A stretch of 64,000 bases of DNA. Origin: Stylophora pistillata. Lineage: Eukaryota. A model generated the notes under the pieces. It saw nothing but the letters and a program-made list of their open reading frames with translations, was not told where the DNA came from and searched no databases. The translations under genes were made by a program, and so were the position numbers. The stretch's first letter is position 1; each line of letters starts with the position of its first letter. Shown here in pieces: positions 1 to 64,000 of this stretch. The stretch is taken from assembly GCF_002571385.2 (NCBI RefSeq), contig NW_019217784.1, positions 1,782,912 through 1,846,911 on the forward strand, read 5' to 3'.

Positions 1-748
1 TTTACCTTTTACCTTTAAGACTATTTCACTAAATTTCACGAGGTTTCCGTATAAATATAAAATGACGCCAACAGTGTTTTGAGTAATCTACGTCACAATG
101 GGAGTGACCGCTGACCGAAGATAAGTTGGCCGTGATTACGAAAATTAATGGCGGAACGGTTTTCAAATCGTAATTTCTCGCCCTAGAATTGACTTTCAAC
201 TAAAATTATTATTGAAAAGGCTTTATTAATCGCTAAAAATTCATATTATAATGAAATAACTGAATTTTTCGGGTTTTCAAATTATAGGGCGGTTTCGTAA
301 GAGTGCTCTTTTAAGCACAAATCCAATTCTATTCGGAAGCAAGAGATGTTCCCGATTGTGCTGGTCGATGATCGTTTGGTCTGGATTTCTTTAACATCTC
401 GATCGCTTAAGCATGGATTGGAAAGATAGGGCCGCTTGGCGGGTTGCTACTGTGTTCCCAGCGATCAGATCGGTTGATTATTCAATTGGGAGGTTGAAGT
501 TTCTTTATTTGCACCGACATCCTTGCTTTTAGTCCCGTGTTACAAATTGCACAGTTTTAACCTCCCAAGAAAATAACCGTATGATCTGATTTGGATCGCA
601 AGAGAGCATATTAACCGAGTCTGTTTATTAATTTGCAACAGGAAAGTTGATTTTTTATCTATTCCATCTGCTATGGGACACAGTCCCCAGGGACTCGTTG
701 ATGTCTCGCTAAATGACTGGCTTGTGAAAATGTCTTGTGGCATTTCTC

Positions 749-3700
749 TCAGTTGAATGGCTTCTCGCCAGTGTGAGTACGTATGTGGTTATTTAAGGTG
801 GTAGCCCCTGAGAAAGAGCGCGAACAGAACCCGCACTTAAACAACTTTTCATTGGTATGCGTGTCCACGTGACTTCTGAGTTCTGTCGGCGTCCCATATG
901 AAAGCGTACACTGGCCGCACTGATACGGTTTATCAGGGGTCTGGGAACACTCATGCATTTGAAGAAGAACCCGCTGAGTGAAAGTCTTTAAGCACTGCCG
1001 GCACCTCCACATGCCAAATTCGTCCGGAGACAGAGAGATTCCTGATATGTTAGTTCCTGAGTATTCATGATGTTGGGGCGTGTGGAGAAGTGGGGGTATG
1101 ACTGGACGAAGCGCAGGCATTACACACTTCGCTGCTTCTCCGTTCCGCTTGAGAGCTTGTCCTTCACTTGTGCGTGGAAAATTTTGTTGATCATCTGGAA
1201 AAGTCATAGTTTTGGCGTTGCTATCTTAAGATTTATATCAACAAGCGGCATGCCAATACGTTAACCCATAAGAGGTTATGTTCCAGCCTAACAAGCTTTA
1301 AAATACGACCCTTGAAAAAAGGACTCATTTCATGGAAATATTTGAATGCGTCGAAAGCAAATGAAAGCCTCTATGAAACGCGTCGGCCTGCAAATAACGG
1401 GTTACATGCTAAGGACTTTCATAAACAAGCCTAATTTTATTAAATCGACCCTGTGTGGAAGCTTTCTTTTTAAAGTGAATAAATTTAGTACTCACTATCG
1501 AAGAATTGTAAGGGCGGCATTTCACGCAAAGCGTTTATTTTCGGTGGCAGTCTTCTTTCGTGATTAGACAAGGAATCCTCATCTCTTTGCTGTTCCCAAT
1601 GTTTATCAGACAAATATCCTCGGGTTGAATTTTCAGTTTTCAAAACTTTTTCTCGCGAGTCCTTGTTCCTTAATTGCAATGAATAAAAATTGTCATCATT
1701 GGACGTAGGCATTTGCAAAAGATTCCTGGAAAATTGTCTGTCAACTGTCGTCGTTGCAGTTAAATCTGTCTTAACCATTATACTTTCAACCGAACTTGCA
1801 GCCATGCTGGGGCTACCTCTATTTCCAGAAGTGCCAAGCTTGTCTCGAGGGAAAACATTACCCAAACTACTCGCGGGGCGCACGAAGCGTGGAGCTGGCT
1901 CACGTGGTGAAGGGAATCTAAAATTACCCATATTAGGATTATCACGTGATTCTTGAAATCCGCAGGTTTTTGAAAATCGTGCCATTGGGTCGACAAACGA
2001 ACTGGCGGGACTGCTGACCGGAGAGCTTTGAGCATTGGAAGATGGCACTGTGAAATAAAAAAGGAGAGATAAACGTAACATCTCAGTCAGGCGGTCTTAA
2101 TTTACAAGCAATGTGAGAGTTTGTAATGGGGTTCTCATTCTGAGGAATCAAGAATTCTTAGCATATTTCAAAAGGCCATTAAGAGAAGGTTGGGTTACTC
2201 AGAACAGATAAAACACTTGAAAGTTATGCTTGGTGGCTTCGATTTACACACTAACTCTTGGTCGCTGATTTAAAAATATGACAATAAGATATAGGGGTAA
2301 CTTCTCCATTTATTATACTGCTTACATATTTCCTTTTTAATTGTTAGTTTGACTAACTCGAAACAAAACCTTGCAAATTATTCTCAACTGAAACGTTAAC
2401 TAGTTCTCTTTAAACCCGATATTGAAAATAAGAAATCCTTTTTTTAGGTAAGTGGTAAAAATCAGCATTGCCTTACCAGATTCTCTGAAGAGTTCATAGT
2501 CCTGAATACCTAGAGGAATTCCAAGGAATTGTGGATATTTTTCATCATACCAGACCAGTAATTCTGTTCCTGGCGGAACCTCTTTGAACGCTCGGTAAAA
2601 AATATTGCCACAGTATTGAAAAGCGTACAGATTCTGCTCCTTCACATGACGCGCACATTGAATAAATCGCATCCAACTGGACTTGTGTTCATCGCGTCCG
2701 TCAATATAGTGACTTAGTCGGCCATCTTTGTAGATCTATAAAGCAAGAATCTGAATATTCAACATCTCACTGCGTCAGGTTGCGCAGGTGTAGCGAGGCA
2801 AGAGGACGAGGGGCAACTTGACCGTGGGGTTAAGATACTAGACGCGCTCCAAGTTCAACTCCCTGCCCCCTCCTCCCTGTAACTTACTGGGTTACCACAC
2901 TATGAATTATTTCCAAGTCCTAAAAAAAACCTTAATCATTTCTCTCCCAACATATTGATAACAATTTTCCGGAATTAGATCTCTAAAGAAATCCTAAATC
3001 TTTTAAATCTTTTATATGGAGTCAGTATATCTATTTCCTTGAAATATGTTGATAGTCATAATGTTATGCTCAAAATAAACGCACAATTTTGATTAATTTG
3101 TTTTGGATAAACAATATATCCACAACATGAACTTTAAGACACCTGTCATACCATATCAGATATTTATAGGAAGATATATATTTAGAATATTTTACCTATT
3201 TATAATTGTTCTCTGAATTATTTTTCAAGTTATATATGGCTCAAAATATATTTACAGACATATAGATTTAGGAACTCCGAAAAAGGAGAAAAATCTTAAA
3301 ATACTTCAAGAGGATTGGGCCCCATATTAAGAATTGAGCCCCATATTAAGGATTGCACTCCATTAGGCTTTGGTAGATTGTGCTCGAAAAAAAACCATAT
3401 TATGCTTCTAGCAGTGCTCATATTTTTTAGAAATTATGCTAAAATTATGCTACTTTCTGAAAATTATGCTCTCTGTCATCCAAATTATGCTACTTACATT
3501 TTACACTGATTTTAAGGAAAATAAAGATCATCAGTGGCTTAACTCTATCAATTTTGACTTTAATGAACATTCACATAGTCCACCTTCCAGTCTTACAGTC
3601 TTTAGCATCGCAAATACGCATGTGCGTACCTCGAAAAGCCAAATGATTAACAAATGATACAAATGATACGTTCTCTAGAGATTAAAGCTCTCGGTATGGC

Positions 3701-5948
3701 ACTGGAAGTGCTTGAAGTGGTGGAAGTGGATGTACTCGAGGACGACACCATCTTTGATTTGAGGCCTGAGGGGCCGAGCCGCCCAGCCATAAGCGTGGTG
3801 GCCTGAGTCTCAGTCTTATGCACAGGGTGACCTCTGCCGCCTGCCGGACCATATTTGACCTGGGCCTTAGCACAGACCTCAATATTTTCCAAAAACAATA
3901 CAAAAATAAAATACAAACTGAATTATTCTAGAGCTATGATGGTTTTTTTTTGTTGTTGTTGTTTTCAACGCATGAAAGCTCGGATTATGCCAGCAGTGCT
4001 AAACTGAAATAAAAGCTGAAAATAATGCTCGTTTTGCTGAATTATGCTTAAAATTATGCCAGTACTATCTACCAAAGCCTAGACTCCATATAAGAACACA
4101 CTAAATGCTGTTCAAATCTTACCTCCCATAGATATGTTGTTTCATAATTTGACGGAAAATTTCGAGCTGGCAGCCGGCTTCCCTCATATGGACCTATCCA
4201 TGTGCCCAGCGGAATGTGCTCTCTCGCGCACACTCCATAACCAGCCCCAGGAATACTTGATATACAGAGGTGCACTTCATCCGGGAATGATCGAATAGCG
4301 TTTGTGAGCCGAGGCATCTCATGGTCTGCGGTATTCTTCTGTTTTTTTGAAGACAAACCTCCTGTAATAAATAATAATGATAATTCAAACAAGGATAATG
4401 ATAATAATGATAATAATAATGATGATTTATCGACAGTATTTCTACATGGTAGCTCTACATCCGTCATACTAGCTAAAAACTAAAGACTCACAAGAAACAT
4501 TCACTATTTACATAAAGTACTCAAAAACTGTTAAAACTACATAATCTAAAATACTTTAGATACCACGAGTACCCATAACTAGGAAACCTTATCGAGACAA
4601 CTTATGAGGTCAAACGCATGTTTGTTCTGTTCTTAAGAACTGTACAACAATTATTTTTGAAAGTGTTGAAGTCTGGACATCGCCTCCCACTCGCGGGTAG
4701 GGCAGTGATTAAAGTCGATAGAATACTTGAGAGGCTGACATGACATGCGTCATAATCACGTGCCTGTCAGATGTCATGAAAAATGTAGCAGTCCGAGATC
4801 GCGTAGTGCGATGGAAGAGAGCTAGCCACGACCTTGACTACCAGAGCCTCTACACCGTGAATCGAGATCACAGCATAAACAATAAGGACATAAACAAAGT
4901 AATGGTGCCACAAATAAAGCTAGGAATCCTGTCAAACCAAATGCAGATCCCTGACATGCTTATAAAGAGCTCTTACTTACAGAATAAACAGACCACACAT
5001 GACCAAACCGCAGCATGAGAGATCATTTCTGATCTGTTTTTTACCTTCATTTCAAAAAAGGCCCCTTTCTAAAACCTTTCACCGGAGCCTAAACTCTTCT
5101 GACTCAAATGCACTCTATGGCTATTGAAAAATGTGTATTTGAAAAGAGGATCTCGAAAATGAACAGTTAATTTGTGGCCCAGATACCAATGAATAAAACT
5201 CTTTTCACAACTGTCAAAGACAAAGACGTATTATTGTCACTTGAAACCTCGAGATAAACCGGAAAACTCGCACGTTTTCCTTTTTACGCAATTTTTATTT
5301 GATGAAATTTTTGCACAGGATTTGCCGAGTTTCAAATGTTTCCACTGCATCCGAAATGTATTACCTCTGCATGAAGGAAAGTTTAAGTGAACAATACGCA
5401 CAAGGCAATATATTGGCTTGAAATTTCTGCCCATGCAAATTTTTTGTGGTAATCCTTCAGGGCAGGCGCAGAAACCTCGTAAACAAAACATTGAAAGCGG
5501 AACTTTTTAGAACAATCAAATTAATGCAATGTCGACAAAAGAGAATAACAACGTTATCAATGCTATCCTGAATATTAACATATTCGTGAACACTCTAGAC
5601 ACTTTGTGGTACGGTTTTCTTTGGAAGTAGAAACGGGCTTGTATTGCTTCATGGTAGTTTTAAGAGCTGAGTTAAATTCCCTCCTTTATCAAAAATATCA
5701 GTGATATTGTTTTTAGCGATTTTGTCAGGCGCACTCGATAAAAGATTGCTTTTACCGTCATGTTAATAAGCTATTTTCGTACCTTGTTCATCTCCGGCCT
5801 TCCGTTTCAGTTTCTGCAAATCTATAACCCTGACTTGTTGAGAACCATATAAGACTAAATTTAGAGTTCTCTCGTCGATCAGACAATAACCATTTCCTCC
5901 AGTGTAGTCCTTTGTGTTTTCTTGTTTTGGGCCGGTTTTGTCTTCCAT
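749..5948 (-). CDS. PRDM6: PRDM6-like PR/SET-domain zinc-finger protein, paralogue g1 (~563 aa to the first TGA; ~589 aa if read through to TAG at 671-673)
   Basis: Exons 5948-5783, 4361-4123, 2735-2477, 2047-1496 and 1224-749, all GT-AG with phases 1,0,1,1. Contains the pre-SET motif [15 protein letters not shown], the PR domain ([57 protein letters not shown]) and fingers [39 protein letters not shown], which match vertebrate PRDM6 as I recall it. Possible 5' UTR exon ends at 7377 (GTGAGT donor). AATAAA on the minus strand at 624-629. Confidence 0.9.
3364..4081. mobile_element. Non-autonomous hAT-like DNA transposon in g1 intron 2
   Basis: Terminal inverted repeats TAGGCTTTGGTAGAT / ATCTACCAAAGCCTA. 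Near-perfect 8-bp target-site duplication CACTCCAT (3356-3363) / GACTCCAT (4082-4089). Multiple AATTATGC subterminal repeats. Confidence 0.8.
4366..4735 (-). mobile_element. Probable 5'-truncated LINE 3' end with (ATT/ATC)n tail in g1 intron 1
   Basis: The minus strand has a broken frame ..SLP../[12 protein letters not shown] resembling a LINE ORF2 C-terminus, then a short UTR and a trinucleotide tail (4366-4425) abutting the exon-2 acceptor. Confidence 0.35.
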
Positions 5949-8900
5949 TTGTAACCAGCTGGTTTATGCTACGTGAGAAAGAAGCATGCACGATTTCATT
6001 ATTTAAACATTATGTTTGAACTATAACACTAAACCTCTTTTGTGTCAACGAAAGCGGACTTCAAAAGTAGACATTTTAACGCTGTATTTCATTATCAAGT
6101 GGAATGCACTGGTAAATTTTGAAAAGCAGTGAGGTTGGAAAGTTCGTTCCACTGGTTATTTTTAGAAGGTGTTTACTCATTTTGCTTTTCAGCGACACAC
6201 AAAAGGCCTTTTCTGTGTATTTTTTTAGCAGCGCATCCTACTTTTTTAAACATTAACTTATCATAGTAACTTAAGTTCAATAATTCCCTCTCAATCGTTG
6301 ACACAAACCAGATCTGCAGCGTCGAATCTGAGAGGTATTAAAATGATGATGGGTATATTTTAAGTTAAAGTATTATTTACGATGTTAGGTTAATATTTCT
6401 CCTGGGATACAAAATACAATTTTGGATCAAATACTGAACTTTGTGTTGTCTACAGTCACGTAAAGATCAAACTTGTTTCAGAACTTTACCTTTTCTTTCA
6501 CCTTGAATTGAAGTAGTAAATTACAAGTGATGCATATTGTTGAGCCTCTGTATTGAACTGGGGCTAAAACTTGGCTAGCGTTTATAACAAGTTGGCCCAA
6601 GCAGATTTGAATTGTACGTATATGTAATGATTTGATATGATCTCGATGGATTATATTTATGCAAAGAATTTCCGGAGCGCAAGATCGATGGATACACTTT
6701 CCTTTTCCGCCGTTTTTGTTCTAATGTCGAGAAAAACGTGTTGAATTATTCACTGACTCTTCTCCCTGCGTAACTTTGTTCGAATTTTTTCCTTGTTCGT
6801 TTTCTTGTGCAGTGAAAAACTAATTTTTCAAGTTTTCCCGTTTGTTTTCATGACCGCAGGCCATGAACCAAAGGTTTTTTTCAAGCCAGGCACACCACAA
6901 GTGAGAACAGGAAAAATCGTTTTAAAGCCATTCATTGTATAACAGAGCACTGTTTAACATGAGGCGTGGAGGAGATTACGAGGTTGATATCAAATGGCTG
7001 TATGTTGGCTGACCGGTTAAAGAAAGGAAGCAAACACCACGTATGTTTTTTAAGGGAACATGTCTGTGAGCGCGTCTTCTGTTTATTTTTTCTCCTGCTG
7101 ACCGCAAAATTTCTCTAAGATTTAACTGCTGCAGGCTGAATATGTCCACATGGAAGTGATGTTCAAACCACTCTGTCCCACGAGGCTTTATACCAAAGCA
7201 TGCTCACATAAATGGCGACAATATCCCGTTGATTTATTGCAGAAAACTCTTCAATGGTGGTTTGGTTTAGGTCGATGGGCTCAAAGTGCAATCTGAATGT
7301 TAATTTTGTAGAGCTCTATGTTTCTCCACTGTCTTATTTATTAAAATAAGGTCCAAGCCAGTTAAACTGTACTCACCAGAATAAAGCTATCTCTTCTCTT
7401 CGTCCTCGAAGCTGGTCATTTAGTTCGTTTTGATAGCAAAACTATGCTGCCTTCGTTAGATCTCCAGATGTGTGGAAGTACAAGGAAAACTTTCTTGTAT
7501 CACTCTTACGGGGCATAAAAAAGATAATATACCCTTAACCTTTTGTACTTCCATGCCGACAATAATTATTGTTCTCAAAAATTCCGCATTCCGGTGGCTG
7601 TGTCATGACCCGCCATGACAGTTTGGCTCAGCAGACTGCGCGTGTTTACACTTCTTTGTGCAGCTTAATTTCTTAAAATAGAAAACATTTCGGCTATAGA
7701 ATACGAAATCAAGGCCTGTTTGTAAAGTGTGGTGGCTCCTTCAACTCAAAATGCATCAAAATAAGTTATCGAAAAGTGGCGAAAACAAGCTGACTCATAG
7801 AGTGTGTATATGCAAAGTAGATTTAATTACTCACTCATTACGTGAACATGTTTATTGGCAGCTCTACAAAATATTGTTGATGGAGTACCCGGCAGAGAAA
7901 TACTAGGTTTTTATTTGTTTGTTTACTTAGAAACGAAGCTTTTCGAAGACAGTATCTAATGCTCATTCTCTCAAGTGCGTTTAAATATAGATTGAGAACT
8001 AAAAAGACCATCTACATTTTTTTTTTTTTTTTGCGACAAGTTTTTAGCTAAACCGGGATAGCGCTATATTCAAGTCTGGCAGAGAATCAAAATAAATTGT
8101 TACACATATCTACAAAGAGCCAATTCCTTCTTGGAAATTCTGAGACCGAATTGTCTGTTAATGTCGATCTTGAGTAAGAAGGCTTAACCTAACATTCCTT
8201 CGCGGCAAAAAGTACAATTCAAGGAAATTTTGAAAGAAAAATATCCTTGCACATATATCCGTGTGAGATATTTAGATCTAAATGCTCATCTTATATAGGA
8301 AACCTGGAAACGGAAAACTTGAAAAATTTCCCGAGCAATATAAGACATTCCTCATTGGAAACGGAATACGCGCCCGTGTGGGGGTTTCTGAAGTCGGACC
8401 TGTATTTGATCGCGGACAATGTATGCGGAACTTTGTACTATCCAGCAAGCAATTTATTCTGCACTATAGAAATGATTGTTTTATATAATATTACTCTCGT
8501 CTAGGCCATTACCTCATTAAGAATAACATCATTTAACCGCAACACGGAAAATCTTTGATAAATCAGAAAAAAAAGTTTGTTATTCGCGCTTGGTCACGAA
8601 AGGAGTTCCGGAGGATTTAGTAAGCCTGGTATTTACCACGACTCAAATTTTTAGTCTTTTTCCAACGGACTGGTCTTCATGAACAAGTTTCAAACGACTG
8701 AAACTGAGTGTAATATGCGTAAACGGTATATTTGAATATTTGTATATTGAACACCATGCCCGTATATTAGTTCTCAGAATTGTGAATCCTGACAACTGAA
8801 TTAGAGGCAAAACGTAAATTTCCCAGAAGTAATTCAATAGCAGTATAACTGATTGAAAGGACGGTTATCAAAGGACAGTTATGACCTTGAAATTGAATGC

Positions 8901-16178: not shown

Positions 16179-19100
16179 ATGGACGGTTCGCCATCATCAA
16201 CAGGATCTTCACAGTACCGTGTGCATTTTACTGAACAAGATCTGCAATATGTTCTGTACGGGAGAAATCCTGTGGAGGTGGTACAAATTTTAAAAACGAC
16301 GACTGAAGAAGACATGGACAGCTCAGGTAAATTAAACTTCGAGTTCCACGCATACATGTTATTGACCTAGGGCGAGGTCTTAACGGTAGGGAGCTACTGC
16401 AACGAGGTCTGTACTTACAGAAAACACCAAGGACCAATTTCTCGCACTAGGTGCTAATTTTTTTGTCTTACGGCTAACTGTTAACCCCGTTGGGACCCTC
16501 TGAAAAATATTCCATTGGAAGTAAAATACTTATGGACGGATTTCTTGCATGTAGAAACCTACGCAATCAAATTTTCACGACCGTAATTAAATTTTATCAA
16601 AAAAAAAACATTCTATGGCTCAACGTATAAAACTAGGAGAGTTACATAAGTTAAAGTCAATCTTCTGTTAAACCATTGTTAAAGATCATATAAATAAAAT
16701 TAAAAGGGACAGTTAACATTCTACAAAACCCAGGGCTCAAAGTTGAATTTTGGCTTTGGGAGCACTCGTGCTACCAGATGTAAAATTTTAGGCGCACTAC
16801 TAAAATTCTAGGCGCACAGCGAAAAATGTTAGGAGCACAGCTTAAAATACTGGTGGAACCAAAAAAAAAAAAAACAGAAAGCTTCAGACGTTGTATAAGT
16901 AATCATTTATCGGCATGATGTCTTTTATTTTAAACGGATCTGTGTTTGTTCCCACCTTCAGGCTACTACTCTACATTAGAGATAACAATAATACTGTTAT
17001 CATACTGTTAGGTTTTTTTTCAATTAACTTCTCCATCTCAAGAAGTATTGCACTTCATGGTACCTGTACATTCAAGGCAACAGAAAAATTCCGTATTCAT
17101 TTCCTTTGAAATGAGCGTGAATAACTAAGAAAAAATACACTGCCAGTTTACTGTTCACAACTTTCATTTGATTTCCAATGAATACACCTTTAGTTTAAAG
17201 CTGAAACAGACTTGGACTTGGAACCATGTCCTTAATACAACATTAACTCGATCATTCGAAATCCTGTGAGTGCCACGAGTCAGCAACTGAGATTAGTTCA
17301 TCTGGCCACTTTCTCTAAGCAAAGTTGGGACGCCTTGGTCTCTGACCGCTACGGTTCAAATAACAATCCCTGCAATAAACATGGCTCTTACTCTTCGAGC
17401 GCTTAGTAAGTGTCTCATGTTTAAAATTGCTGCATCCATTGACTAAGGATGGGAAGGCTTTACAGTATCGGCAGCGAATCAACTCTTTTTCTGAATCGCA
17501 TTCAAGCCATTCGAATTCCTTCAGCCATGCTCTCTGAAACTTATATACTTTTCTTTTTTTGTTGTCTCTGGTTCGTCCTCTATATCTTGGAGTAAAGCAC
17601 TATCAATGGAGCTGGACACTGAAGAAGTTTTCGAGTTCGAAGCTGAAGAAGAAGGCGCCGGCCGGCTGTTCAATAACAAAACTATAGTTATGCAAATGAG
17701 CGTTTCGTAAGAGAATAAATTACATTGATTGCCATTGACTTAACTGAGATGTACAATACAATACAATACAATAAAGTAATTTATTATTCGTCGTTTTATT
17801 TAAATTGCTCCCGCCGTGAAGAAAAAAAGTCTTTTAAACCAGGTTGTTTAGACATTCTTGCCTCTGGCTTTACCTTTCACATCGACCGGTGAACTTGATT
17901 GCCGAGAAGCACGTGCTTTAAAGGTAGCCTTCACTCGCATGAGTCAGCGGAGTATTTGCAAAACCGAATAGGACTGGGATAGAATGGGAACATGGAGCTC
18001 CGAGTTCGGAGAAGCCACAGCAGATAAAGACCAATAAAACGCACACTGATGCAAGGAAAATGATAACTTTATTGTTTGCAGCCCGATTATGTCATACCTA
18101 CGATTGAACTTATTATTTCAATCTTCCGTTTCATGTCCAACCAGTCGGAGTCATTTTAGAATGATCAGGTAGGAAAACAGAGTTGAGTGGCGATAAGCTC
18201 AGTCGCACTAATCTCTGCGATTTATAGGGGCGCAAGTGCGATCACACATGAATTTTTAGGCGCACAATTAAAAATCTAGTCGCATGTGCGACCAGCTGGT
18301 CGCTAACTTTGAGCCCTGAAACTCCCATAAATATAATGAATCAAAACCTCTCTTAGAATCGGCAGATTCGGATTTAAATTTGCTTCTGCCTGGGACTGAA
18401 AGATCGGTAATTAGGTTTTGTATCTAGAAAATTGCTTTAAATTTTATCGGAATATGTAATAACGATCTATACAACAAACAGAGTCTATTTGCACTCAAAG
18501 ACAAAATTTATAAACGCGCTCAGCCAACCAGCATCCTCTATACTGAAACACTAACATTAAATAAACTTTCTGTTATTAAGTAAAATGAAACTTTTAACAT
18601 AACTGAAATTATGTGACACTGATCAAATCAAATGTATGTGTTAACATATAAGAACATTTCAGTTGCGCTTAAGGCATGGTATGGTGTAGACTTTTGTGTA
18701 AGTGTCAGTATATTTTGTTTTTGACAAGGCAATTGGGTCCACTGATAGAGTGAAGTGGAGAAATAAAAATTGATATTAAAAAAAATTAATTGAAAAAACA
18801 TTTCTTACATAAAAACCGAGTAATATGTGCTAACTAATTTTTCTATATAAAAGAAACCGATCAATGTGTACAATCAATATAGTAAAACTCTATCTTATTT
18901 TGAAAATTATAGGGAGAGATCCTTTATTTGCTTGTCTCCGACAAAAGCTTCTAGGAAAAAAAAATTAATTAGCTCGTAATAATCAATTTATTTCATTTGA
19001 CTCTCACTGTTATCCAAAAGAACAACAACCCGAGTTTCTCAAAACAGCACCAGACAAAAGATGGATTAACGTCGCCATGGAGACAGGTCAAAGTAAGTCC

Positions 19101-22844: not shown

Positions 22845-23022
22845 TATTATTTCAGCTGATAATTTTAACTGGTCAACTTAAAAGGTTTTTAAAGCTCAAG
22901 TTTCGATCTTTAGCCCTTCGTTATTCGCTCTAACGAAGGGCTAACGCTCGAAACGTTAGCTTTAGGAACTCTTTGCGGCGGCCAACTTACATTATCAATT
23001 CAGTTGATAAAACTAGATTATC
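22845..23022 (+). mobile_element. Second, more decayed Penelope-like pLTR fragment with a dead hammerhead motif
   Basis: GCTCTAACGAAGGGCTAACGCTCGAAACGTTAGC (22927-22960) plus the same downstream tail as 21016-21075, preceded by a degenerate inverted copy. A further fragment lies at about 48550-48620. Confidence 0.6.
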
Positions 23023-23256
23023 TTAGGATGTGTAGACTTCGTTTAATGAGAAAGTTGTAGAGTTAAATTGGGAGAAGCAAATACGGTCTGCTAGCAAAGA
23101 AGTATTGTTAAGATATCGAGATAACCGTAACTTAATTGCTACAACTATATTGGTTGTATTGCTACAAGAGTTGTTCATATTTCTAATACAACCAGTATAC
23201 TTCTGCGGTTGAAAAGTTTTTGCCATATCGATAGCGTTTCCACGTAAGTGTTGTCA

Positions 23257-49305: not shown

Positions 49306-52300
49306 ATGGAGCTAACATACGAGGTAAGAAATTGCATCGAATTTAGACATAAATGAGTGTAAAGCGAAAGGTAAACAGCATCATCAGGAATCATTGTTTG
49401 AAGAAATGGGTCCAGTATGGTTTTATGTTTCATGAACTGTATTTTAAACCTGCATGTTAATATCCCAACAGTCAAAAACTGATAATTCAGCTCGGCAATA
49501 TTGCGTTAATGTTTAACAGCCATTTCCGCTAAATCTGTTAAATCTAGTAGTCTTTTTTCCCCCTCTTTTTACCTTGAATCTTAAAATATTCGATTAAACA
49601 TCCCGTCAGTCGCTGCATTTGTTTATTCTATAAATATTCCCATTTTGTTTTTGAAAGCTAAATAGCTTTTGAGCAGCGATTATTACTTGAAGCGAATATA
49701 TTCACGCACTGATGAATTTCTTCAAAGTCAGTCAGATGAATATTTATCATCATTAAAAATTTGTTGTCGTTATAATCAAAATCAACACTATCGATATCCT
49801 AGTGTATGCTTTAAGGATATTCTCCTTTTTTATTCTTTCCCCTTTAGAAACAAAATCTTGAGATTTCGACAAAGAATTTTCAACCTGTTTTAAAGAAACC
49901 ACGGTTTCAGAAAAACTACGCTAATTTCAGTCCCTCCAGAAGGAATTCTACAGGGAACAGCTTCAGTTATGAAGATTTACTGAGCTTTTTGTTCGACAAG
50001 AACAATATTCGGCCCCTAAACATCGAACAATCAGCCGTAACACACCAAAAAGATTGCTTCTGTAAGTATGCTGGAGTAAATGATTGATCTCCTTGGGGTT
50101 AATAAGTTAAAGTCAGCTTTAACTAGTGTTCTATGACAGCCTCTCTTTTTCATATGATTCAGGATTAGTAATTGAAAGAAATTCAAAGCACAAAGCGCAA
50201 GGTACTAGTGAAGCGCAATGGATCATGGGAAGAGGGATAAAATACCTAATTCACGAATCCCCTTCAACTTTTGCCCATTATTTTAGTTTTCATTTGTGTG
50301 TTGTACTCTGTGTCCGTGTTTTTTTGTTTTGTTTTTGTTTTGTTAGGGTTAGAATGGACACACACAAGGAATTATGGAATTTTTGTGATTTTGTCATTTT
50401 CAGGGTGTAACGCCAGTTTAGTAGAATCAAAGTTTCGGTGTCCTCAACACAGATTAGAAAGCCTTGGCACGAAGCAAACAAATCAGTTACCACTCACGAT
50501 AAGATCCCTTCCGCCGGAAGTTGGCTTGTGTCAGTCCAGCATTCCTGGCGCAGGATATGGGGTGTGTGCTAAGAGAACAATTCCTATTGGTGCATGGATT
50601 GGGCCCTATGAAGGAAAGTTTGTGAAGCCCGAGGAAATATCTTCTGCTGTAGACACATCTTACATGTGGGAGGTAGGGTTTCTCTTGGAAAATACACCGT
50701 GCAAAATATTTTAAATATAGTACGTCCTCAATCGCTTGGTAGACACACAGCAAATTTAAACTAATTGGGTGTTGGCCAAATGGCTTTACGACGATTACAT
50801 ATTTGATTTACCCCCCCCCCCCTTCCCAATAGATCTACAAAGACGGCATAATGACAGGATGCATTGATGGCAGCGATGAAAATTATTCCAGCTGGATGCG
50901 TTTTATCCGCTGCGCACGACACACAGGGGAACAAAACATGTTTGCCTTTCAATACCTGGGCAAGGTGTTTTATCGCGCTTTCAAGACCATCCAACCAGGA
51001 CAGGAAATGCTTGTGTGGTACGACGACAAATATCCACAGTACTTTGGTATCCCCTCAGCTATGTTTGACATGGGTACTGTCATACCAAGTGGTGAGTGAC
51101 CCTTTCTCCTCTAACATTTGAGCAGTCACAATAAAGATAAACAAATAAACAACAAAAACCACAAGAGACATAGTACCCACAGTCCACTAAATCCTGGATT
51201 GGAAGTGGATATATGTGGCAGTTACACGAGGCGGGTCACCGTTCCTGGTATTCTGCGTAACGAGTGAAAGGTGGGGAGTGTAAGTTTTAGGAGGTGACCG
51301 AGACATAGCCAAGATGACGAGCAATTCCAGAGGATTCCTCTGTAGTTCTGACCTAAACCAGGAGTCCATTACCCGGAGCTTCCATCTTCCATACTGACCC
51401 TCTGCGCCAACCCTGTTCCGTATCTTTCTATTTTTAGAAGCACCTCCCACGGCGGTTTTCGCGGGTGTTTTTATAATAGCCAATCATAAGAGAGCTGTCG
51501 TCTCTATTGTGTTACGTCTCTATTGTGTCACTTGTCAGGCCGCACGAAATTATTTCAATAATGGCGGAAAGCGCGGAAAGATTAAAGAGCCACCGCAAAT
51601 ATCTCAGTTCTAAAAATAAAAAGATACGGGACAGGGTTGACTCAAGGGTACAACTGAGATGGAAGCTCCGGGTAATGGGCTCTTGCCTAAAATCGTTAAA
51701 GTGACAAATGAGAGAAAGTAATACAAATGTTTAAGTTCATCTGAACTGGAGGATAAGTGGCTGAGACGTTAAAGCACTTGTGGTAATAACTAAAAGTCTG
51801 TCAAGTGTCATCAGCATAGTTAGAAATGGGGGGAAATATTTGAAAAGTTTCAAAGTGAATCTCACGATAAATAACGGTTTACCTCTGGTAAAGATGACAT
51901 TAGTGGTTGTGCTTGACTTGTTAGTTAGTTAGTTGTGATTGAGTGGTTGCTAGTGTTTATGATTGCTTTTATATTTAAGACAGAGATGATATGAAAAGTT
52001 TACAGCAGCTTAAGCTAGACTTTACATTGTTTTGTTAGATACCAGCTCCAAACCTAATGAGGTGATTGTTGTCACTACTCACGTAACAAACCAGCCGTTA
52101 GACACCAGTCCACAAAGTTCCTTCTTTCCCAGTCCTCCTCCCTCGCCTGTTTCTCATTCCAGTAGCCAATTTGGATCAAATCCAGTTAGTTTGAAAGGAA
52201 ATTGCTCTCCTATACGTAAGACCGGCGATGAAAGGCTTTCTTCTCCCAAGCACGAAGGCGCGATGAAACCTGTGCCAGACATGAAGTTCGTCTTTGAGAA

Positions 52301-52745
52301 TGGCTACAGTCCGCTGAAACAGAATGAGGGTAATGCAGTAACAGAAGCTGAGCGAGGACGTCCTGAATCATATGAATCACTCTCGCTGCCTGGGGATGAA
52401 TCAAATGTTTGTAAAAAGACAGCAGCAGTAAATACCGACTCCAAAGCCACGGAGCTTAGCGTAGGAACAGCTACAACTTTTAAAGAAATGTCTGTGTCTC
52501 AGATGGCAATTGGTACCCAGATCCCACCAATTCCTTATCAGTGTGGTCACTGCCCAGCCTCTTTTAACAATGTCTGTAAATTGCGCGCACATGCTGTCAT
52601 CCATGTCAGCAAGAAACCCTTCAAGTGTGGGTACTGCTCACGCTCTTTCACGGGGGCAACCACTGTGAACAACCACATTCGATCACATGTTGGAGGCCGA
52701 TTGTTCGCCTCTAGAAAACGTCCTCTCCAGACTGAGGAAGTGTGA
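49306..52745 (+). CDS. PRDM6: PRDM6-like protein, paralogue g5 (~488 aa), with only two intact zinc fingers
   Basis: Exons 49306-49323 (MELTYE, inferred), 49848-50061, 50404-50672, 50833-51091 and 52039-52745 (phases 0,1,0,1). Motif FSYEDLLSFLFD (this exon is missed by the ORF track), knuckle CFWC..CPQH split across the intron, and an intact PR domain. ZF1 is degenerate and ZF4 is absent. Confidence 0.87.
51170..51690. mobile_element. Degenerate long-inverted-repeat (MITE/foldback) element in the last intron of g5
   Basis: Inverted arms at about 51355-51480 and 51560-51690, e.g. CCATTACCCGGAGCTTCCATC / GATGGAAGCTCCGGGTAATGG. Right outer end not found. Confidence 0.55.
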
Positions 52746-55403: not shown

Positions 55404-58400
55404 ATGAGTAGCGCAGGCATTTCACGTCCTAAATCCACAAGCGAACACACATTATTAAATCGAACGCAACGAAGAATTCGCACACAAGCCGCGGATGCCA
55501 ACCTTTGTACCACAGAAGATCTTTACCAATGTTTATACCAGCGAAATCAAGTCATTTCTGTGAGCAAGGACGATTTTAGAACTTCACGTCTACATAAAGA
55601 AGAAGTGTTCAGCTACTGTAAGTCGCCATTTTGTCCAATGTTTGCCAAAGATATTTTTCAACGAATATTTCCGTAACCAATTGCAAGGTTTCGCAGGTTT
55701 ACATCGGTATTGTTAAAATAGAGTTGTTTGCGGTTTAATTTTTCTCATGATAGAAACTAACTTTGCTACAATTCCGTGTGGATAAGGTTTTAATTAATAA
55801 GTGTTCTCAGAAGATAACTGGGTAAATTGAATTAGGGACATCTGCACAATACCAAACACAACTTTGTAACATTCATCTAACAATTTTGACCAGTTTCGAA
55901 AAATTCTTGATTCCACCGTGATTACAAATAACCTCGAACAACATCAAATTAAAAAACCTATGTAGCTCCGCACAATATTTTCTTACCTCAGTATAATTAT
56001 AAAATGTCTTAAGCAAACAACAGTCCTTTATGTGGAAGTTTTTTTTTTTATGTTTATGTGGAAGTAGCAAGAGACCGAAGCATATGTTTAGCTACACTTC
56101 AATATCATCATCCGATAGTTTTAGACAGAGATTAGAGGAGATTTGTTGTTATTTTCCCCATTCAGTTTGGTCGTCTTAAATTTAGTATATTGCATAATCT
56201 GTCATTTAAAAAAAAATTACAAACGGTTGCCGCTTCAACTTGACCGGAAGTTGGCTTTGGCCTTGGAATAGCGCCTCTGATGATCATTTTCCGCATAAGT
56301 TGAAGCCTAAAGAACTTAAATCATAAAACAGAATTTGGTTGATACCAAAATAGAAACTGAAAAATGCACATCTATCAAAACGAAAACGATCCTTCTCCCA
56401 AGTTATTTACTTGTTTTATGCTGTCTAGTTGTAACAACAGTTACCATAACCTAGAATCAAAGAGCTTTGATAGGAAAAGGCCGATTTTGCCACTGTTTTC
56501 ATATGAAGAACCATTCCTCTAACATCTTAGAGTAAAAGGTGTCTCGTAATTAATGGCCTCTCAGAGTGACTTCCTCATACGTGCCGCGGTTTGTTTGCCT
56601 CTAAATCGAGCTGATTGTGAGTGACTTGAAGTTCGCAAAAATTAAGGTTATAAATAGCTTCATTTCCATTCACCTCTATTTTTTCATCCTTGTCAATAGA
56701 ATGGGATAATGCGCTTTTTAGGTTTCGTTTTAATCAAGTCGGATAAAACATACTGATACTTTTAGAATACCGTTTCTTCTGAAACGATGATGATGATGAT
56801 GATGATGATGAACTTTATTCATGTGTCAATTATAAAATAGCAGTAGTAAAACCACTGAGTAAAGACACAACAAGGTAATTTAANNNNNNNNNNNAAATAG
56901 TCTGAGCCTAACTAAGATATAACTAAGAATCATGCACTGCAAACCAAGCAGCCCACACAGCCACCAAATCCATTCCTCTAACTGCCCCCTTGAATGAAAA
57001 ACAGTTACGTAATAGAGTTAACCATGCACGTGCTAACTTAGGAGCACATCAACATTAAGCTGTATCATACCTACTCTCTCCTCCCTTAGGGTGTAAAGGA
57101 TGTCGCCTGGAACGGACAGAGCCATGTCAATTCCATGATCCTCAACTGTCATTCAAACTGACAACTTCAGAAAACCACAACAATAACACAAACAATAAAA
57201 ACGTAAATTTGCCGAATGCGGTCGAATCGTTTCCAAACGAAGTGGGCTTGTGCATTTCCAGTATTCCTGGGGCGGGCTACGGAGTCTGCGCAAAACAGAT
57301 CATTCCAGTGGGTACGTGGATTGGACCATATGAGGGGGAACTGGTGCGGCCTGAGGAGGTGGTGCTTGGATGTGATGCGTCATACATGTGGGAGGTAGAC
57401 TTGGTTTATCTACGATTTAACTGACGATTGAGTAATATATATACGATGGCCTCTATTTGGCGCCAAAATACGCATGGATACTTATCCGCGGACACTACAT
57501 GGAAAGTTCACTTTTCAGTGTTCTCTGATACAATTTTATGAACAAAATTACATATTCCTTCTTTTAGCTTATGTAACAACCACACGACGCTTTCTCATCT
57601 TGAAATGAATTTTGAGCGCAGAGTTTTCCGTATTGGACGTGAGGTTTGAAAATTGGGGAAGTACATCTATATTCAGGGTTATCTTCGTATTTGATGAACA
57701 TTAAGCAAATAATCCCTTGAGATTCGCGTTAGGGTGATGCACAAAATGTTAAGTGGCAAATTTGAAGCGTTTCCCATTAAATGTTTTGTACTTTTCTTAA
57801 GAATAAGCTGTAGAAGAACATATGCTAAGTAAGGGCCGCAGATAAGTTTAATGTATTGAAATTCAGGAATTTTTAGACCTGCAAGATCGCTTTGGCTGTA
57901 TAAACATATGACTCCGATAGAGCTAGGTTTAACTTCATTTAAGTCCTTAAGTTAATTTTACGCGTTTTATCAATCATTTTTCGACAGATATTTCATGAGG
58001 GAAAGTTGCTATATTACATCGACGGGAGCAATGAGAACAAGTCCAGCTGGATGAGATACATTAGATGCGCAAGGAATGGAACCGAGCAAAACATGTACGC
58101 TTTCCAGTACTGCGGTAACATTTACTACAGAGCCTTCAGGGACATCCCCACGGGCGGCGAACTGCTGGTTTGGTATGATGAAAAGTACCCACAATATATG
58201 GGCATTCCCCTAGAAATATGCGAAATATCCTTCAGTAATCCTGTTGGTAAGAATACTTCGTATAATGGCAACTATACTTAGTAAGTCCGCTACCAACATA
58301 GAGAATTTCCTAGGAATTATTTTGCTGGATGTGGAGAAGTTGTGTACGTACAGTCTTGCATAACGTCTTCATCTTCATTCGTCATCTTCAAGATTTTCGT

Positions 58401-59493
58401 GTTCTTGCAAAATGTAAGTGCAAAACCATTTAACGGATGACTTAGCACGTAATACTTGCATTGATAAAACATAAATTTATATTTTCTATTTTAAAAACAT
58501 CATGTTTCCTGTGAATGAAAAATACCCTGTAAAGTCATCGAAATACAGTAACTCTCCTTGCATACAGTTCTCAGACATCTTCTTGTGTGTGTTCTTGATA
58601 CAGATCAAAGACAGCATCCCGAAATGGTCGTTGTAATTCCACATGATAATCCCAATCCAGGTTCCTGCCATTCAAAGGAGTCTTCATCCAGTCCCTGGAA
58701 GGATAATCTACAATTCACAACCAGAGTCAGATCCATATTACCGTCACGTGAACAATCACGTGTCAAACGGTGCTTATCTAATAACACTTCTAATAGAGGC
58801 GAAAGTCTGCGTGCATATGCTGAGGAATATAAACGTGTCCGCCATGTTTCCTGGACAGCCGATGGTACGCCATTACAAACCAGTGCGCAAATGACTGAAA
58901 ATTCTCTTTCTTCGGAAGAAGCCCGAAGTAAGCCTGTAAGTCCAGTTCAACATTTTGGATTAAAGAGCGTACATGTGCAAAAGATTCCAAACAATAACCG
59001 TCGTGACCTCAAGTCTTCTGGGGGAAAATACAGTAACGGCTCAAAAATGGCGCCGTCAAGCATAGACGAGAAGCATGCGCAGCTACGGTCTACTGATGAA
59101 GATGAAATCAGTTCGGATGGTTCCGATGCGAACTTTTTCAACTGCGGTCAGTGTGGGAAATCATTTGCTCAACGCTCGGTGCTTCAGATTCACGTATGCC
59201 CCAACATGCCACGCAAGCCCTATCACTGTGGACAGTGCTCTCAGACATTTGATCATCCAAACGAGCTGCGCACGCATGCTGTCATTCATGTGGGCGAGAA
59301 GCCATTCAAGTGTGGTTATTGTTCACGATCATTCGCAGGTGCAACAACTCTTCATAACCACGTGCGCACACACACCGGTGAAAAACCTTTTTTATGCGAG
59401 AGATGTGGAAAGAACTTTACTCAGGCATCCCAGCTTCACAAGCACGAGAATATACCCGGGGATTGTGTTCGATATGATGCCCTGCCTGACTGA
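55404..59493 (+). CDS. PRDM6: PRDM6-like PR/SET-domain zinc-finger protein, paralogue g6 (~555 aa), all modules intact
   Basis: Exons 55404-55617, 57090-57394, 57988-58246 and 58604-59493 (phases 1,0,1). Motif CTTEDLYQCLYQ, knuckle CKGC..CQFH, PR domain with SWMRYIRCAR and four fingers ending HENIPGDC. Confidence 0.9.
56786..56810. repeat. (GAT)n microsatellite, possibly the tail of a minus-strand LINE fragment
   Basis: Read directly from the sequence. Followed by ACTTTATT (AATAAA on the minus strand). Confidence 0.7.
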
Positions 59494-61860: not shown

Positions 61861-63862
61861 TCACACCCGTACCACACAGTCTCCAGGTATTCTCTGATGT
61901 CTGCTGAGCTGTGATCCTTGTGTAAAGTTCTTGCCGCACTTGTCGCAGACAAAGGGGCGTTCACCTGTGTGTGTTCTGATGTGGTTGTTCAATGTGGTCG
62001 CCCCTGCAAAAGCACGCGAACAGTAGCCGCACTTGAATGGTTTCTTGCTTGCGTGAATGACAGCATGCCCGCGTAGCTGAGCTGGGTGGGCGAAGCTCAG
62101 TGAACAGTGACCGCACTGGTATGGCTTCTTTGGGGCTTCATGGCACACATGAACCTGGAGCATGGTTCTTTGAGGGAAGGACTTTTTGCACTGGCCGCAT
62201 TTCCACAAACTTAGTTCTGTTATGTTACTGAACGCGGGCTGATTGATTTTAGTGGCGTTGATCTGCCTGTCTTCACAAGAAGCTGGTGAGGGAGAATTGC
62301 TCCTCTCACTCTCTGGCGATGGCAGTGGATTGGAAAAGTTGGCTGCAGTGACAGAGGAAAAGTCGAAGGCGGAGGGCACTTCGCTCTGAAAACCATTCAA
62401 AGGCTCTCCACTGATTGGCATAGAAGGTGAATGTTGCTGGAGGCCGATTGGCTGGCTGTTTGGTGATGGCGGGCTTCCAGGAGAAGGTACTGAGCTGGGA
62501 GGAGTAGGAGGGTACTGATTTTGTGTCGAGGTCTCGGACGGCAAGCGCACAATTTCTGATGCTTCTGGATTATTTGACTTCCCTAGAGAAATTACAAAAC
62601 AAAGAACGTCTCAATTTCCCTTTAACCTCAACAAAACCGTCGCCACGAATCGCAGAAATTATCAGCCACTGCATAAAACATAGCTGAAATCTTACCTTTG
62701 ACTGTAAGAGAGCCCAAATCAAAGACCGAGCTCGGAACGCCAAGGTACTGTGGATATTTATCATCGTACCACACCAACATTTCTTGTCCGGGCTGAATAG
62801 TCTTAAATGAACGATAGTAGACCTTACCCAAGAACTGGAAGGCAAAAAGGTTTTGTTCTCCTTTGTGGCGAGCACAGCGGATGAACCGCATCCAGCTGGA
62901 AACCTTTTCATCGCTGCCGTCCACAAATCCAACCAGTTTACCGTCTTTGAAGATCTGTTAACGTAAACAGAGAAATGAACAACACAATCTCCATACACAC
63001 ACACACACACACAAAAACAAAACAAAACAAAACAAAATATGATCATTCAACTTTCCTACCTCCCACATGTAAGATGTGTCTGTAACAGAAGAAATTTCCT
63101 CGAGCTTCACAAACTTTCCCTCGTAAGGACCTATCCATGCCCCAATCGGAATTGTTTGCTCGGCACAAACTCCATATCCTGCCCCGGGAATGCTGGATGC
63201 ACACAGACCAACTTCCGGCGGAAATGATCTTAAAGCGAGAGGCAATTGACTTGTCTGTTTCGCGGCAGTGGTTTCACGTTTATGATTTGGGCAGTTAAAG
63301 CCTGGGTCTGTCTTGCTTGCATCACACCCTGAGAGAAGAATAATAAACATTCGATATTGCCATGTTTCATAAAATAATAGAGAATGGATTAAGTCATATT
63401 AGCGCTACGCACGCAAAATCACGGTTAAAAAAAAATTAAGTAACCTTGCAATGTCGATAGCTGTTCAAAGTCTTTTCATTCAAAATAAGAACACAAGCAT
63501 TATTGTGAGATTTTGATGCTGTTACAGGATGTATCGAAGGAACAGAAAACATCTTGCGAACTTTCTTTTTTCCTTTTTTTTTTTTCAAAATCATCTAACG
63601 CATCATTTCGCGCAAGCAATTCAAGCACGAAACACTTACAAAAACAACCCGCTGCATCTTTTTGTCCTAAAATTTCACGGGTGTTAACTGGATGAACAGT
63701 GGATACGTGAAATAGGCACTTCTGCACATCAGCCATAGAGAAAGAAAACTGTTTCAAGTTCGAAACTGATGCGCTTTTGGAGGAAGGAGTTGACATCTTC
63801 GCTTTCTTGGTCACGGGCTGATAAAAACTGTTAGCGCTTTCTACCCCAAAAGGTTTGTTCAT
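61861..63862 (-). CDS. PRDM6: PRDM6-like PR/SET-domain zinc-finger protein, paralogue g7 (~490 aa from ATG 63862; may be 5'-incomplete)
   Basis: Exons 63871/63862-63640, 63328-63060, 62954-62696 and 62582-61861 (phases 1,0,1). Motif [12 protein letters not shown], knuckle CFWC..CPNH, intact PR domain and four fingers ending HQRIPGDC. The acceptor at 63872 implies a first exon outside the window. Confidence 0.9.
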
Positions 63863-64000
63863 TTTTCGCGTCTGCAAAAAATAAAACAAAGTTTGCATTA
63901 GATAGAATTCAAGAACGAAAACATTCAAACTTCCATTACAGAAAAAATAAAAAATAAAATCAAGAAGAAAATGTCAAGGCCGGATGAGGAAACAATATAG

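What the first reader, a model, noticed from the sequence alone, without database searches (positions are those of the whole stretch)
671..63871. Seven-gene tandem cluster of PRDM6 paralogues filling the whole window
Seen: seven spliceable PR/SET + zinc-finger genes and no other recognisable gene in 64 kb. They share a phase-1 intron after the pre-SET exon, a phase-0 intron at YxWE|I and a phase-1 intron after the PR domain. Linkers and introns are unalignable, so the duplications are old and the copies were retained. Established: PRDM6 is a single-copy transcriptional regulator in vertebrates. I recall that cnidarians have several Prdm6 copies, but cannot confirm that a physical cluster of this size has been described. 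Inference: a conserved chromatin-regulator cluster, possibly deployed in different cell types. Genes sit at both window edges, so it may extend further.
Basis: partly seen in the sequence, partly recalled or inferred. Interest (0 to 1): 0.85.

Follow-up and report, generated by a model that had tools for sequence, protein, structure and literature searches.

The report
Coral tandem cluster of PRDM6 genes
The window holds seven, and the cluster at least ten, neighbouring copies of the chromatin regulator gene PRDM6 in the stony coral Stylophora pistillata; the copies are old, conserved and expressed, the genes are already annotated, but I found no paper describing the cluster.

Summary
The window (Stylophora pistillata, scaffold C1:1782912-1846911) holds seven PR/SET plus C2H2 zinc-finger genes and no other recognisable gene. 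All share intron phases 1, 0, 1.

The array extends beyond both edges. There are at least ten genes in about 92.6 kb, which is 10 of the 12 PRDM6-type loci found in this genome.

PR-domain and PR+zinc-finger trees place all ten with vertebrate and hemichordate PRDM6 (support 99/95 and 100/98). PRDM7/9 and PRDM14-like genes fall outside. The four fingers are collinear with vertebrate PRDM6.

The copies are old and constrained:
- One-to-one orthologues exist in Porites, Acropora, Orbicella, Oculina and Pocillopora.
- Gene order and orientation are kept in two unnamed corals and in Porites.
- dN/dS is 0.03-0.07.

Architectures have diverged: g5 keeps two fingers and gB none, and both forms are conserved in orthologues.

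The in-frame TGA in g1 is specific to the assembly; four other datasets read TGT (Cys). Stranded RNA reads show g1 spliced at four GT-AG introns.

All four assembly gaps lie outside coding exons.

NCBI already names these genes "putative PRDM6". I found no paper on the cluster. Use in different cell types is untested.

The parts
671..5968 (-). g1, five coding exons: E1 5948-5783, E2 4361-4123, E3 2735-2477, E4a 2047-1496, E4b 1194-671 (stop included). It encodes 579 aa with four zinc fingers. The transcript continues 5' of 5968.
   Evidence: RNA joints 1194|1496, 2047|2477, 2735|4123 and 4360/1|5782/3 appear in two RNA contig sets and in stranded raw reads; depth is on exons only. Model check. 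The Orbicella orthologue P0306 is collinear.
749..751 (-). In-frame TGA in the assembly at the first Cys codon of finger 4 of g1. Other datasets read TGT (Cys).
   Evidence: One search shows the codon. One search shows + strand T>A at 749 in 4 of 4 runs (69.1/69.1, 49.5/49.5, 131/131, 7/7). One search shows that all orthologues have Cys.
16179..21922 (+). g2: E1 16179-16326, E2 19021-19313, E3 19695-19959, E4 21234-21922. It encodes 464 aa and equals RefSeq XP_022781738.1.
   Evidence: P0143 matches at 100%. Junctions, model check. The Logan contig protein P0290 spans the E3-E4 junction.
32918..35424 (+). g3: E1 32918-33152, E2 33564-33838, E3 34127-34376, E4 34649-35424. It encodes 511 aa.
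   Evidence: Junctions fitted to P0105 and P0104, the Pocillopora verrucosa PRDM6. Model check.
41259..46828 (+). g4: E1 (5' end open) 41259-41445, E2 43398-43663, E3 44265-44520, E4a 45881-46042, E4b 46242-46828. It encodes at least 485 aa.
   Evidence: Templates P0292 (Orbicella) and P0131. Model check.
49878..52745 (+). g5: E1 about 49878-50061, E2 50404-50672, E3 50833 to about 51073-51091, E4 about 52015/52039 to 52745. The PR domain is intact. Finger 1 is degenerate, finger 4 is lost, and only fingers 2 and 3 remain.
   Evidence: The two-finger form and its C-terminal tail are conserved in eight aligned orthologue clusters at 49-95% identity.
55404..59493 (+). g6: E1 55404-55617, E2 57090-57394, E3 57988-58246, E4 58604-59493. 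It encodes 555 aa. The 11-N gap 56884-56894 lies in intron 1.
   Evidence: Templates P0025, P0023 and P0021. Model check.
61861..63874 (-). g7: E1 63874-63640 (5' end open; a further 5' exon probably lies beyond the window), E2 63328-63060, E3 62954-62696, E4 62582-61861.
   Evidence: P0069 is a 499-aa protein from about 2-kb Logan contigs. It is continuous across all three junctions at 91-99% identity.

Best explanation
This is the core of a tandem array of at least ten PRDM6-subfamily genes. It spans G000:C1 about 1,759,121-1,851,713, or 92.6 kb, and seven of the genes lie in the window. The genome is that of the stony coral Stylophora pistillata.

Shown here:
- The array arose by repeated local duplication of a PR/SET plus four-finger gene.
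- The duplications predate the radiation of stony corals.
- The copies are kept under purifying selection, and they are transcribed and spliced (shown directly in this species for g1 only).
- Gene order and orientation are conserved among corals.

Inferred, not shown:
- Each copy is a sequence-specific nuclear chromatin regulator. The fingers would bind DNA, and the PR domain would either methylate histones weakly or recruit repressor complexes, as reported for vertebrate PRDM6.
- Because the finger recognition helices are nearly the same in all copies, the copies probably bind similar sites.
- The copies would then differ mainly in three ways: their N-terminal and linker partner regions, their finger number (4, 2 or 0), and where and when they are expressed.
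For: Structure: seven copies each of three conserved exons plus an upstream exon, with phases 1, 0, 1.

Extent: three more copies lie on the same scaffold. Only two further PRDM6-type loci were found in the genome.

Subfamily: there is a PRDM6 clade with 99/95 support and 100/98, and the references in it were named through. The fingers are collinear with rabbit, turtle and Glandiceps PRDM6.

Age and constraint:
- Orthologue pairs are strongly supported: gB-Porites, g1-Orbicella, g4-Orbicella, g3-Oculina/Pocillopora, and g5/g7-Acropora/Oculina.
- dN/dS is 0.03-0.07, with dS above 1.

Synteny:
- g2, g5, g6, g7 and gC keep the same order and strands on another coral's contig.
- gB(+) and g1(-) are neighbours in Porites lobata.
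- A gA-like and a g1-like gene are tandem neighbours in Nematostella.

Expression:
- g1 has spliced, strand-specific reads.
- g2 has a RefSeq model.
- Full-length proteins from short Logan contigs match gA, g3 and g7. Orthologues of g1, g4, g6 and gB are also represented this way.

Active site: both PRDM9 catalytic tyrosines that lie in E3 align to invariant Tyr.
Against: - No biochemical or binding data exist for any copy.
- Expression in this species was tested directly for g1 only.
- The trees sample only PRDM6, PRDM7/9 and PRDM14-like outgroups. PRDM12, the proposed sister subfamily (PMC4760075), is absent.
- The relations among cnidarian lineages and bilaterian PRDM6 are an unresolved polytomy.
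- Scaffold continuity across four gaps, and across a 3,643-N block between gB and g1, is not shown by the assembly itself.
- g4 and gC carry Phe instead of Tyr in the G-P-Y-E-G motif.
Confidence: 0.85

Rival explanations
1. The genes are the truncated SET+zinc-finger ('SZ') paralogues of PRDM9 recently described in cnidarians, not PRDM6.
For: Among solved structures, PRDM9 is the best match to the PR C-half. A 2026 preprint (10.64898/2026.09.07.749791) reports old, conserved SZ paralogues of PRDM9 in Hexacorallia and names S. pistillata among the species it studied.
Against: No PRDM6 structure appeared among the solved-structure hits, so that ranking cannot discriminate. In both trees the cluster genes are separated from the PRDM7/9 clade by strongly supported branches. 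That clade includes Nematostella 'PRDM9-like' P0209 and three loci of this genome, on C76, C63 and C489. The finger region is 58-69% identical and collinear with vertebrate PRDM6.
Confidence: 0.03
2. The array is a young, lineage-specific burst, or an assembly artefact such as collapsed or duplicated haplotigs, and not an old conserved cluster.
For: Coral genomes are rich in recent tandem duplicates (PMC10236652). The scaffold has four gaps inside the array.
Against: The copies are only 51-70% identical in the best-conserved exon. Their linkers and introns differ. Each has its own orthologue in distant corals. The order is the same on another coral's contig.
Confidence: 0.02
3. The array is partly decaying: g1 (stop codon), g5 (two fingers) and gB (no fingers) are pseudogenes.
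For: The assembly has a TGA in finger 4 of g1. Fingers 1 and 4 of g5 are lost. No finger exon was found for gB, and an N block follows it.
Against: The g1 codon is TGT in four other datasets, and the gene is spliced and expressed. The g5 two-finger form and its tail are conserved in the aligned orthologues at 49-95% identity. The Porites orthologue of gB is a 331-aa PR-only protein found on many mRNA-sized contigs, and gB has a matching finger-less last exon before the N block.
Confidence: 0.05
4. Several of the PRDM6-type lineages predate the split of cnidarians and bilaterians. On this reading the cluster is a relic of an ancestral multi-gene array that bilaterians reduced to one gene, rather than a cnidarian expansion.
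For: In the free tree, bilaterian PRDM6 sits inside a polytomy of cnidarian lineages, and Nematostella P0211 branches first.
Against: Holding all cnidarian rows together as one clade is not rejected (p-AU 0.169). Support inside the clade is low. The single-copy state in vertebrates and a hemichordate fits one ancestral gene.
Confidence: 0.2

Closest known systems
Vertebrate PRDM6 (PRISM), a single-copy PR/SET plus four-finger transcriptional repressor
   Same: The PR domain belongs to the same clade. Most copies have four C-terminal fingers in the same order, including the atypical first finger and the near-invariant third finger.
   Different: There are twelve PRDM6-type loci here instead of one, ten of them in one array. 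The N-termini and linkers are unalignable. One member has two fingers and one has none. No functional data exist.
Cnidarian 'putative histone-lysine N-methyltransferase PRDM6' gene models in NCBI RefSeq (Stylophora, Pocillopora, Acropora, Montipora, Orbicella, Oculina, Nematostella, Xenia)
   Same: These are the same genes or their orthologues. g2 is identical to XP_022781738.1.
   Different: The database entries are separate automatic models. I found no text describing their arrangement as one conserved array. An older model, PFX34935.1, fuses g2 and g3.
Nematostella PRDM6-like gene, listed with PRDM13 among predicted early cnidocyte specification factors in single-cell data (bioRxiv 10.1101/2022.05.11.491463)
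   Same: It is a member of the same cnidarian PRDM6 family. This suggests a role in specifying cell types.
   Different: Which Nematostella paralogue is meant, and which coral copy corresponds to it, was not established here.
Cnidarian PRDM9 paralogues and the four Prdm14 paralogues of Nematostella
   Same: These are other PRDM subfamilies that are also multi-copy in cnidarians, and some sit on one scaffold (PMC10415408). This genome has four PRDM14-like loci.
   Different: They form separate clades. Full-length PRDM9 duplicates are reported as recent and short-lived, whereas these PRDM6 copies are old.

Membership tests
PRDM family | PR (SET-related) domain | tested here: met
   PF21549 PRDM2_PR scores up to 1.6e-29 on E3 and passes the cut-off on E2. 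All ten copies were found by the family scan.
PRDM family | C2H2 zinc fingers C-terminal to the PR domain | tested here: met
   Pfam zf-C2H2 matches 3-4 stretches. The alignment shows four fingers in eight of ten copies, two in g5 and none in gB.
PRDM6 subfamily | PR domain groups with bilaterian PRDM6 rather than with other subfamilies | tested here: met
   The clade has 99/95 support and 100/98 against PRDM7/9 and PRDM14-like rows. No row named so far among the 150 best of 1.84 billion representatives belongs to any other subfamily. PRDM12, 8, 13 and others were not in the tree.
PRDM6 subfamily | Four fingers collinear with vertebrate PRDM6, including the C2HC-like first finger | tested here: met
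   One search gives the alignment with rabbit, turtle and Glandiceps PRDM6. Identity to medaka PRDM6 is 61% over 93% of the query and 58-69% for relatives. This feature is not met by g5 or gB.
PRDM6 subfamily | Zinc knuckle just before the PR domain (recalled from the literature for PRDM6, not verified) | tested here: inconclusive
   A C-x2-C...C-x-H motif starts E2 in gA, g3, g4, g5, g6, g7 and gC. It is absent in g1, g2 and gB. Its presence in vertebrate PRDM6 was not checked here.
PRDM6 subfamily | Histone methyltransferase or repressor activity | not testable with these tools
   The only evidence is that the two E3 tyrosines equivalent to PRDM9 catalytic residues are invariant.
Tandem gene cluster | Adjacent paralogues without unrelated genes between them, kept in order in other species | tested here: met
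   No other Pfam, Rfam or tRNA feature lies in the window. Order and strands are conserved in other corals.
Truncated PRDM9 (SZ) paralogues of cnidarians | SET domain nested in the PRDM9 clade | tested here: not met
   The cluster genes lie outside the PRDM7/9 clade, whose support is 97/83 and 100/98.

The most novel reading that the evidence does not exclude
The array is a conserved regulatory unit, not just a leftover of duplication. On this reading it is a set of PRDM6-derived factors at least as old as stony corals, and partly shared with sea anemones. The members would have near-identical DNA-reading fingers but different partner regions and finger numbers. The array would be held together by shared regulation and would specify different cnidarian cell types such as stinging-cell or neural lineages. 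The finger-less and two-finger members would act as modulators of the four-finger ones.
Probability: 0.15. Interest if true: 0.7.

Novelty: new member of a known kind. Interest (0 to 1): 0.4.

Why it matters
PRDM6 is single-copy in vertebrates and was inferred to be the one Prdm subfamily certainly present in the last common ancestor of animals (PMC4760075). This coral has twelve PRDM6-type loci, ten of them in one conserved array.

That gives a natural series for studying how one chromatin regulator diversifies. The finger helices stay nearly the same, while partner regions and finger number change. The result also gives candidate regulators for cnidarian-specific cell types.

On the practical side, it corrects a fused gene model (g2+g3). 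It also shows that an apparent stop codon in g1 is peculiar to the reference assembly.

Tried and rejected
- Selenocysteine reading of the g1 TGA. No SECIS or any other Rfam family was found, and reads show TGT. Rejected.
- Solved structures as a classifier. No PRDM6 entry appeared among the hits, and the best matches are PRDM9 for E3 and PRDM12 for E2. This does not separate subfamilies.
- E1 motif against solved structures. There was no meaningful hit and no match to the PRDM14-CBFA2T2 entry. The co-repressor-dock idea stays untested.
- Look-ups of four NCBI proteins (Oculina, Acropora, Nematostella isoform X2) in the look-up of encoding contigs found nothing on record. One contig had no DNA available.
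- dN/dS for gB, g1, gA and gC pairs failed because synonymous sites are saturated.
- Motif search for E1 failed for several genes. Those exons were later found with orthologue templates.
- The flanks L001 and L006 gave no informative ORFs, so the genes that bound the array were not identified.
- The supplementary tables of PMC4760075, which hold copy numbers per species, are not held.
It was rerun with references only.
Exon translations were joined only inside scripts, for frame checks and trees.
Full report
**What is in the window**

tblastn with exon peptides finds exactly seven copies of three conserved coding exons. These are a PR-domain N-half (E2), a PR-domain C-half (E3) and a last exon with linker and zinc fingers (E4). 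Pfam scores them as PRDM2_PR/SET and C2H2 fingers.

An upstream exon E1 carries a short shared motif, F-[ST]-x-x-[DE]-[LV]-x-x-x-L-[YF]. It was located for all seven genes with orthologue templates.

Models for g1, g2, g3, g4 and g6 use only GT-AG introns with phases 1, 0, 1. They give open frames of 579, 464, 511, at least 485 and 555 aa. The g7 row was run with an off-by-one E2 bound and did not give an open frame, so its junctions and phases rest. g1 and g4 have one further phase-1 intron in the linker.

Ten other ORFs had no Pfam match. No Rfam family and no tRNA was found.

**Gaps**

Three gaps (13476-13562, 25476-26088, 38175-38304) lie between genes. The 11-N gap 56884-56894 lies in intron 1 of g6. 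No frame is read across a gap.

The assembly cannot show that the pieces are joined correctly. The same order of g2, g5, g6, g7 and gC on one contig of another coral supports the joins.

**Whose genome**

g2 translates to a protein 100% identical to XP_022781738.1, 'putative histone-lysine N-methyltransferase PRDM6 [Stylophora pistillata]'. That record sits on a contig of 2,969,787 bases, which is the length of scaffold C1 that holds the window.

An older model, PFX34935.1 (939 aa), fuses g2 and g3.

**Extent of the array**

A family scan of the whole assembly and tblastn on fetched flanks show three more copies on the same scaffold:

| Copy | Strand | Position on C1 |
|---|---|---|
| gA | - | about 1,759,121-1,763,482 |
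| gB | + | about 1,775,512-1,777,625 |
| gC | - | about 1,849,743-1,851,713 |

That makes at least ten genes in about 92.6 kb. A block of 3,643 N lies between gB and g1.

Elsewhere in the genome only two more PRDM6-type loci were found, on C412 and C271. The other PR-domain loci look like PRDM9, PRDM14 (four loci) or more distant subfamilies.

**Which subfamily**

A profile of the ten E3 peptides was searched against 1.84 billion representatives. The best hits were named through their cluster members.

| Tree | Data | Result |
|---|---|---|
| | PR domain, 56 rows, IQ-TREE with mixture model | One clade (99/95) holds all ten copies, the C412 locus, rabbit, turtle, finch and medaka PRDM6, hemichordate PRDM6, and rows from Nematostella, Xenia, Hydractinia, Montipora, Orbicella, Porites, Acropora, Oculina and Pocillopora. 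PRDM7/9 (97/83) and PRDM14-like loci (100/99) lie outside. |
| | PR plus finger columns, 38 rows, rooted on PRDM7/9 | The PRDM6 clade has 100/98 support. Vertebrate plus hemichordate PRDM6 form one branch (100/97) within an unresolved polytomy of cnidarian lineages. |

Holding all cnidarian rows as one clade is not rejected (p-AU 0.169). A cnidarian expansion from one ancestral gene is therefore allowed but not proven.

The finger region aligns finger by finger with vertebrate and hemichordate PRDM6, at 61% identity to medaka PRDM6.

The rival that these are the truncated PRDM9 paralogues of a 2026 preprint is contradicted by the trees.

Limit: PRDM12 and several other subfamilies were not in the trees.

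**Age, constraint and synteny**

Strongly supported pairs link single copies to other coral families:
- gB with Porites
- g1 and g4 with Orbicella
- g3 with Oculina and Pocillopora
- the g5/g7 group with Acropora and Oculina

gA pairs with Nematostella XP_032239603 at 94/90.

For g6 and g7 against two other corals, dN/dS is 0.03-0.07 with dS of 1.3-2.4. For other pairs dS is saturated while dN is only 0.12-0.19.

Gene order in other species:
- On contig ctg20860 of ENA sample ERZ25067872, the orthologues of g2(+), g5(+), g6(+), g7(-) and gC(-) lie at 165-247 kb in the same order and on the same strands.
- A second coral has g6(+) followed by g7(-).
- In Porites lobata the gB orthologue (+) is followed by the g1 orthologue (-), as in Stylophora.
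- In Nematostella a g1-like gene ('protein glass', 856 aa) and the gA-like gene are tandem neighbours at 12.5 Mb of one chromosome. Another convergent PRDM6-type pair lies 3 Mb away.

Within the array, g5, g6 and g7 are neighbours and also group in the tree (87/88, and 100/99 for g5 with g7). This fits local duplication.

**Diverged architectures**

g5 has lost the cysteines of finger 1 and all of finger 4. The same two-finger form and the same C-terminal tail are present in all eight orthologues aligned, at 49-95% identity. One of these lies in the syntenic array of the other coral.

gB has a finger-less last exon before the N block. Its Porites orthologue is a 331-aa PR-only protein found on many mRNA-sized contigs.

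These are conserved variants, not decay.

**The g1 stop codon**

The assembly has TGA at 749-751, exactly where all paralogues and all orthologues have the first Cys of finger 4.

Reads and contigs from four other datasets all show A instead of T at + strand position 749, which makes the codon TGT. The datasets are two poly-A RNA contig sets, one probable DNA set and one set of raw stranded RNA reads.

The stop is therefore an error, or a private allele, of the reference.

**Expression**

In the raw stranded run, depth lies on the g1 exons only, on the strand expected for a minus-strand gene. Four GT-AG joints are seen, at 1194|1496, 2047|2477, 2735|4123 and 4360|5782.

For the other genes the evidence is indirect:
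- a RefSeq model for g2;
- full-length proteins from about 2-kb Logan contigs that cross all junctions for g7, gA and g3;
- orthologues of g1, g4, g6 and gB represented in the same way.

gC has no such evidence yet, and g5 only a last-exon contig (P0330).

**How it probably works (inference)**

Each copy should be a nuclear, DNA-binding chromatin regulator.

The recognition helices of fingers 3 and 4 are nearly invariant across the copies and bilaterian PRDM6. The copies therefore probably read similar sites. They would differ in E1 and linker partner regions, in finger number and in expression.

The two PRDM9 catalytic tyrosines located in E3 are invariant. The residue in G-P-Y-E-G is Phe in g4 and gC. 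The numbering of the PRDM9 tyrosines is recalled, and is consistent.

A PRDM6-like gene is listed among predicted early cnidocyte specification factors in Nematostella single-cell data. Which copy that corresponds to is unknown.

**Novelty**

The genes are already annotated as PRDM6 in RefSeq. Vervoort et al. (PMC4760075) treat Prdm6 as ancestral to animals and lost in protostomes, but their text does not discuss cnidarian copies.

Six literature searches found no description of the array. The paper on pervasive tandem duplication in corals does not mention it.

I rate this a new member of a known kind, namely a tandemly expanded transcription-factor family. It is of moderate interest.

**Method note**

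Exons were searched by reference. Joining was done only inside scripts, for frame checks and trees.

Noticed in passing
window 13287-13738: The gap 13476-13562 is flanked by two arrays of a 7-base unit that are reverse complements of each other: (AACGGGG)x27 and (TCCCCGT)x25. This is either a palindromic minisatellite or a scaffolding artefact.
   Followed up: partly
window 45297-45824: A 12-base minisatellite (CAGCCAGATTGT, 44 copies, 92% matches) lies in intron 3 of g4. It produces long spurious ORFs on both strands.
   Followed up: partly
window 16179-35424: GenBank protein PFX34935.1 (939 aa) fuses g2 (residues 1-413) with the last exon of g3 (residues 678-939). The RefSeq model XP_022781738.1 covers g2 alone.
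   Followed up: yes
G000:C1:1779270-1782911 (just before the window): A block of 3,643 N lies between gB and g1. It was not filled. The finger-less last exon of gB lies before it.
   Followed up: partly
L023 (G000:C271:145200-155199): This is a further PRDM6-type locus whose fingers look most like vertebrate PRDM6. The fingers are split over two exons. Its PR C-half was not found, and the locus holds 2,877 N. It could be the direct counterpart of bilaterian PRDM6.
   Followed up: no
L015, L016, L017, L019 (G000:C110 twice, C299, C120): There are four PRDM14-like loci with near-identical finger arrays, the same number as the four Prdm14 paralogues reported for Nematostella. The two on C110 lie about 11 kb apart on opposite strands.
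   Followed up: partly
L010 (G000:C76:264000-273999): This PRDM9-like locus has two identical copies of the PR C-half exon 1.4 kb apart. Stop codons interrupt the finger array, and 468 N are present. It is either a local duplication or an assembly artefact.
   Followed up: no
window 4334-5811: One RNA-library contig (run X8, depth 31) covers intron 1 of g1 unspliced and has 21 differences from the assembly. It could be pre-mRNA of a divergent allele or carried-over DNA.
   Followed up: no
L028 1-4360 (ENA ERZ25067872 ctg20860:212838-217197): In the other coral, an integrase-bearing ORF and a 1,369-aa ORF lie a few kb upstream of the g5 orthologue. They are probably a retroelement inside the array.
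   Followed up: no
window 63862-63874 and beyond 64000: The transcript-derived protein P0069 starts with six residues that are not encoded next to E1 of g7. g7 therefore probably has a further 5' exon outside the window. The start codons of g4 and g5 are likewise unresolved.
   Followed up: partly
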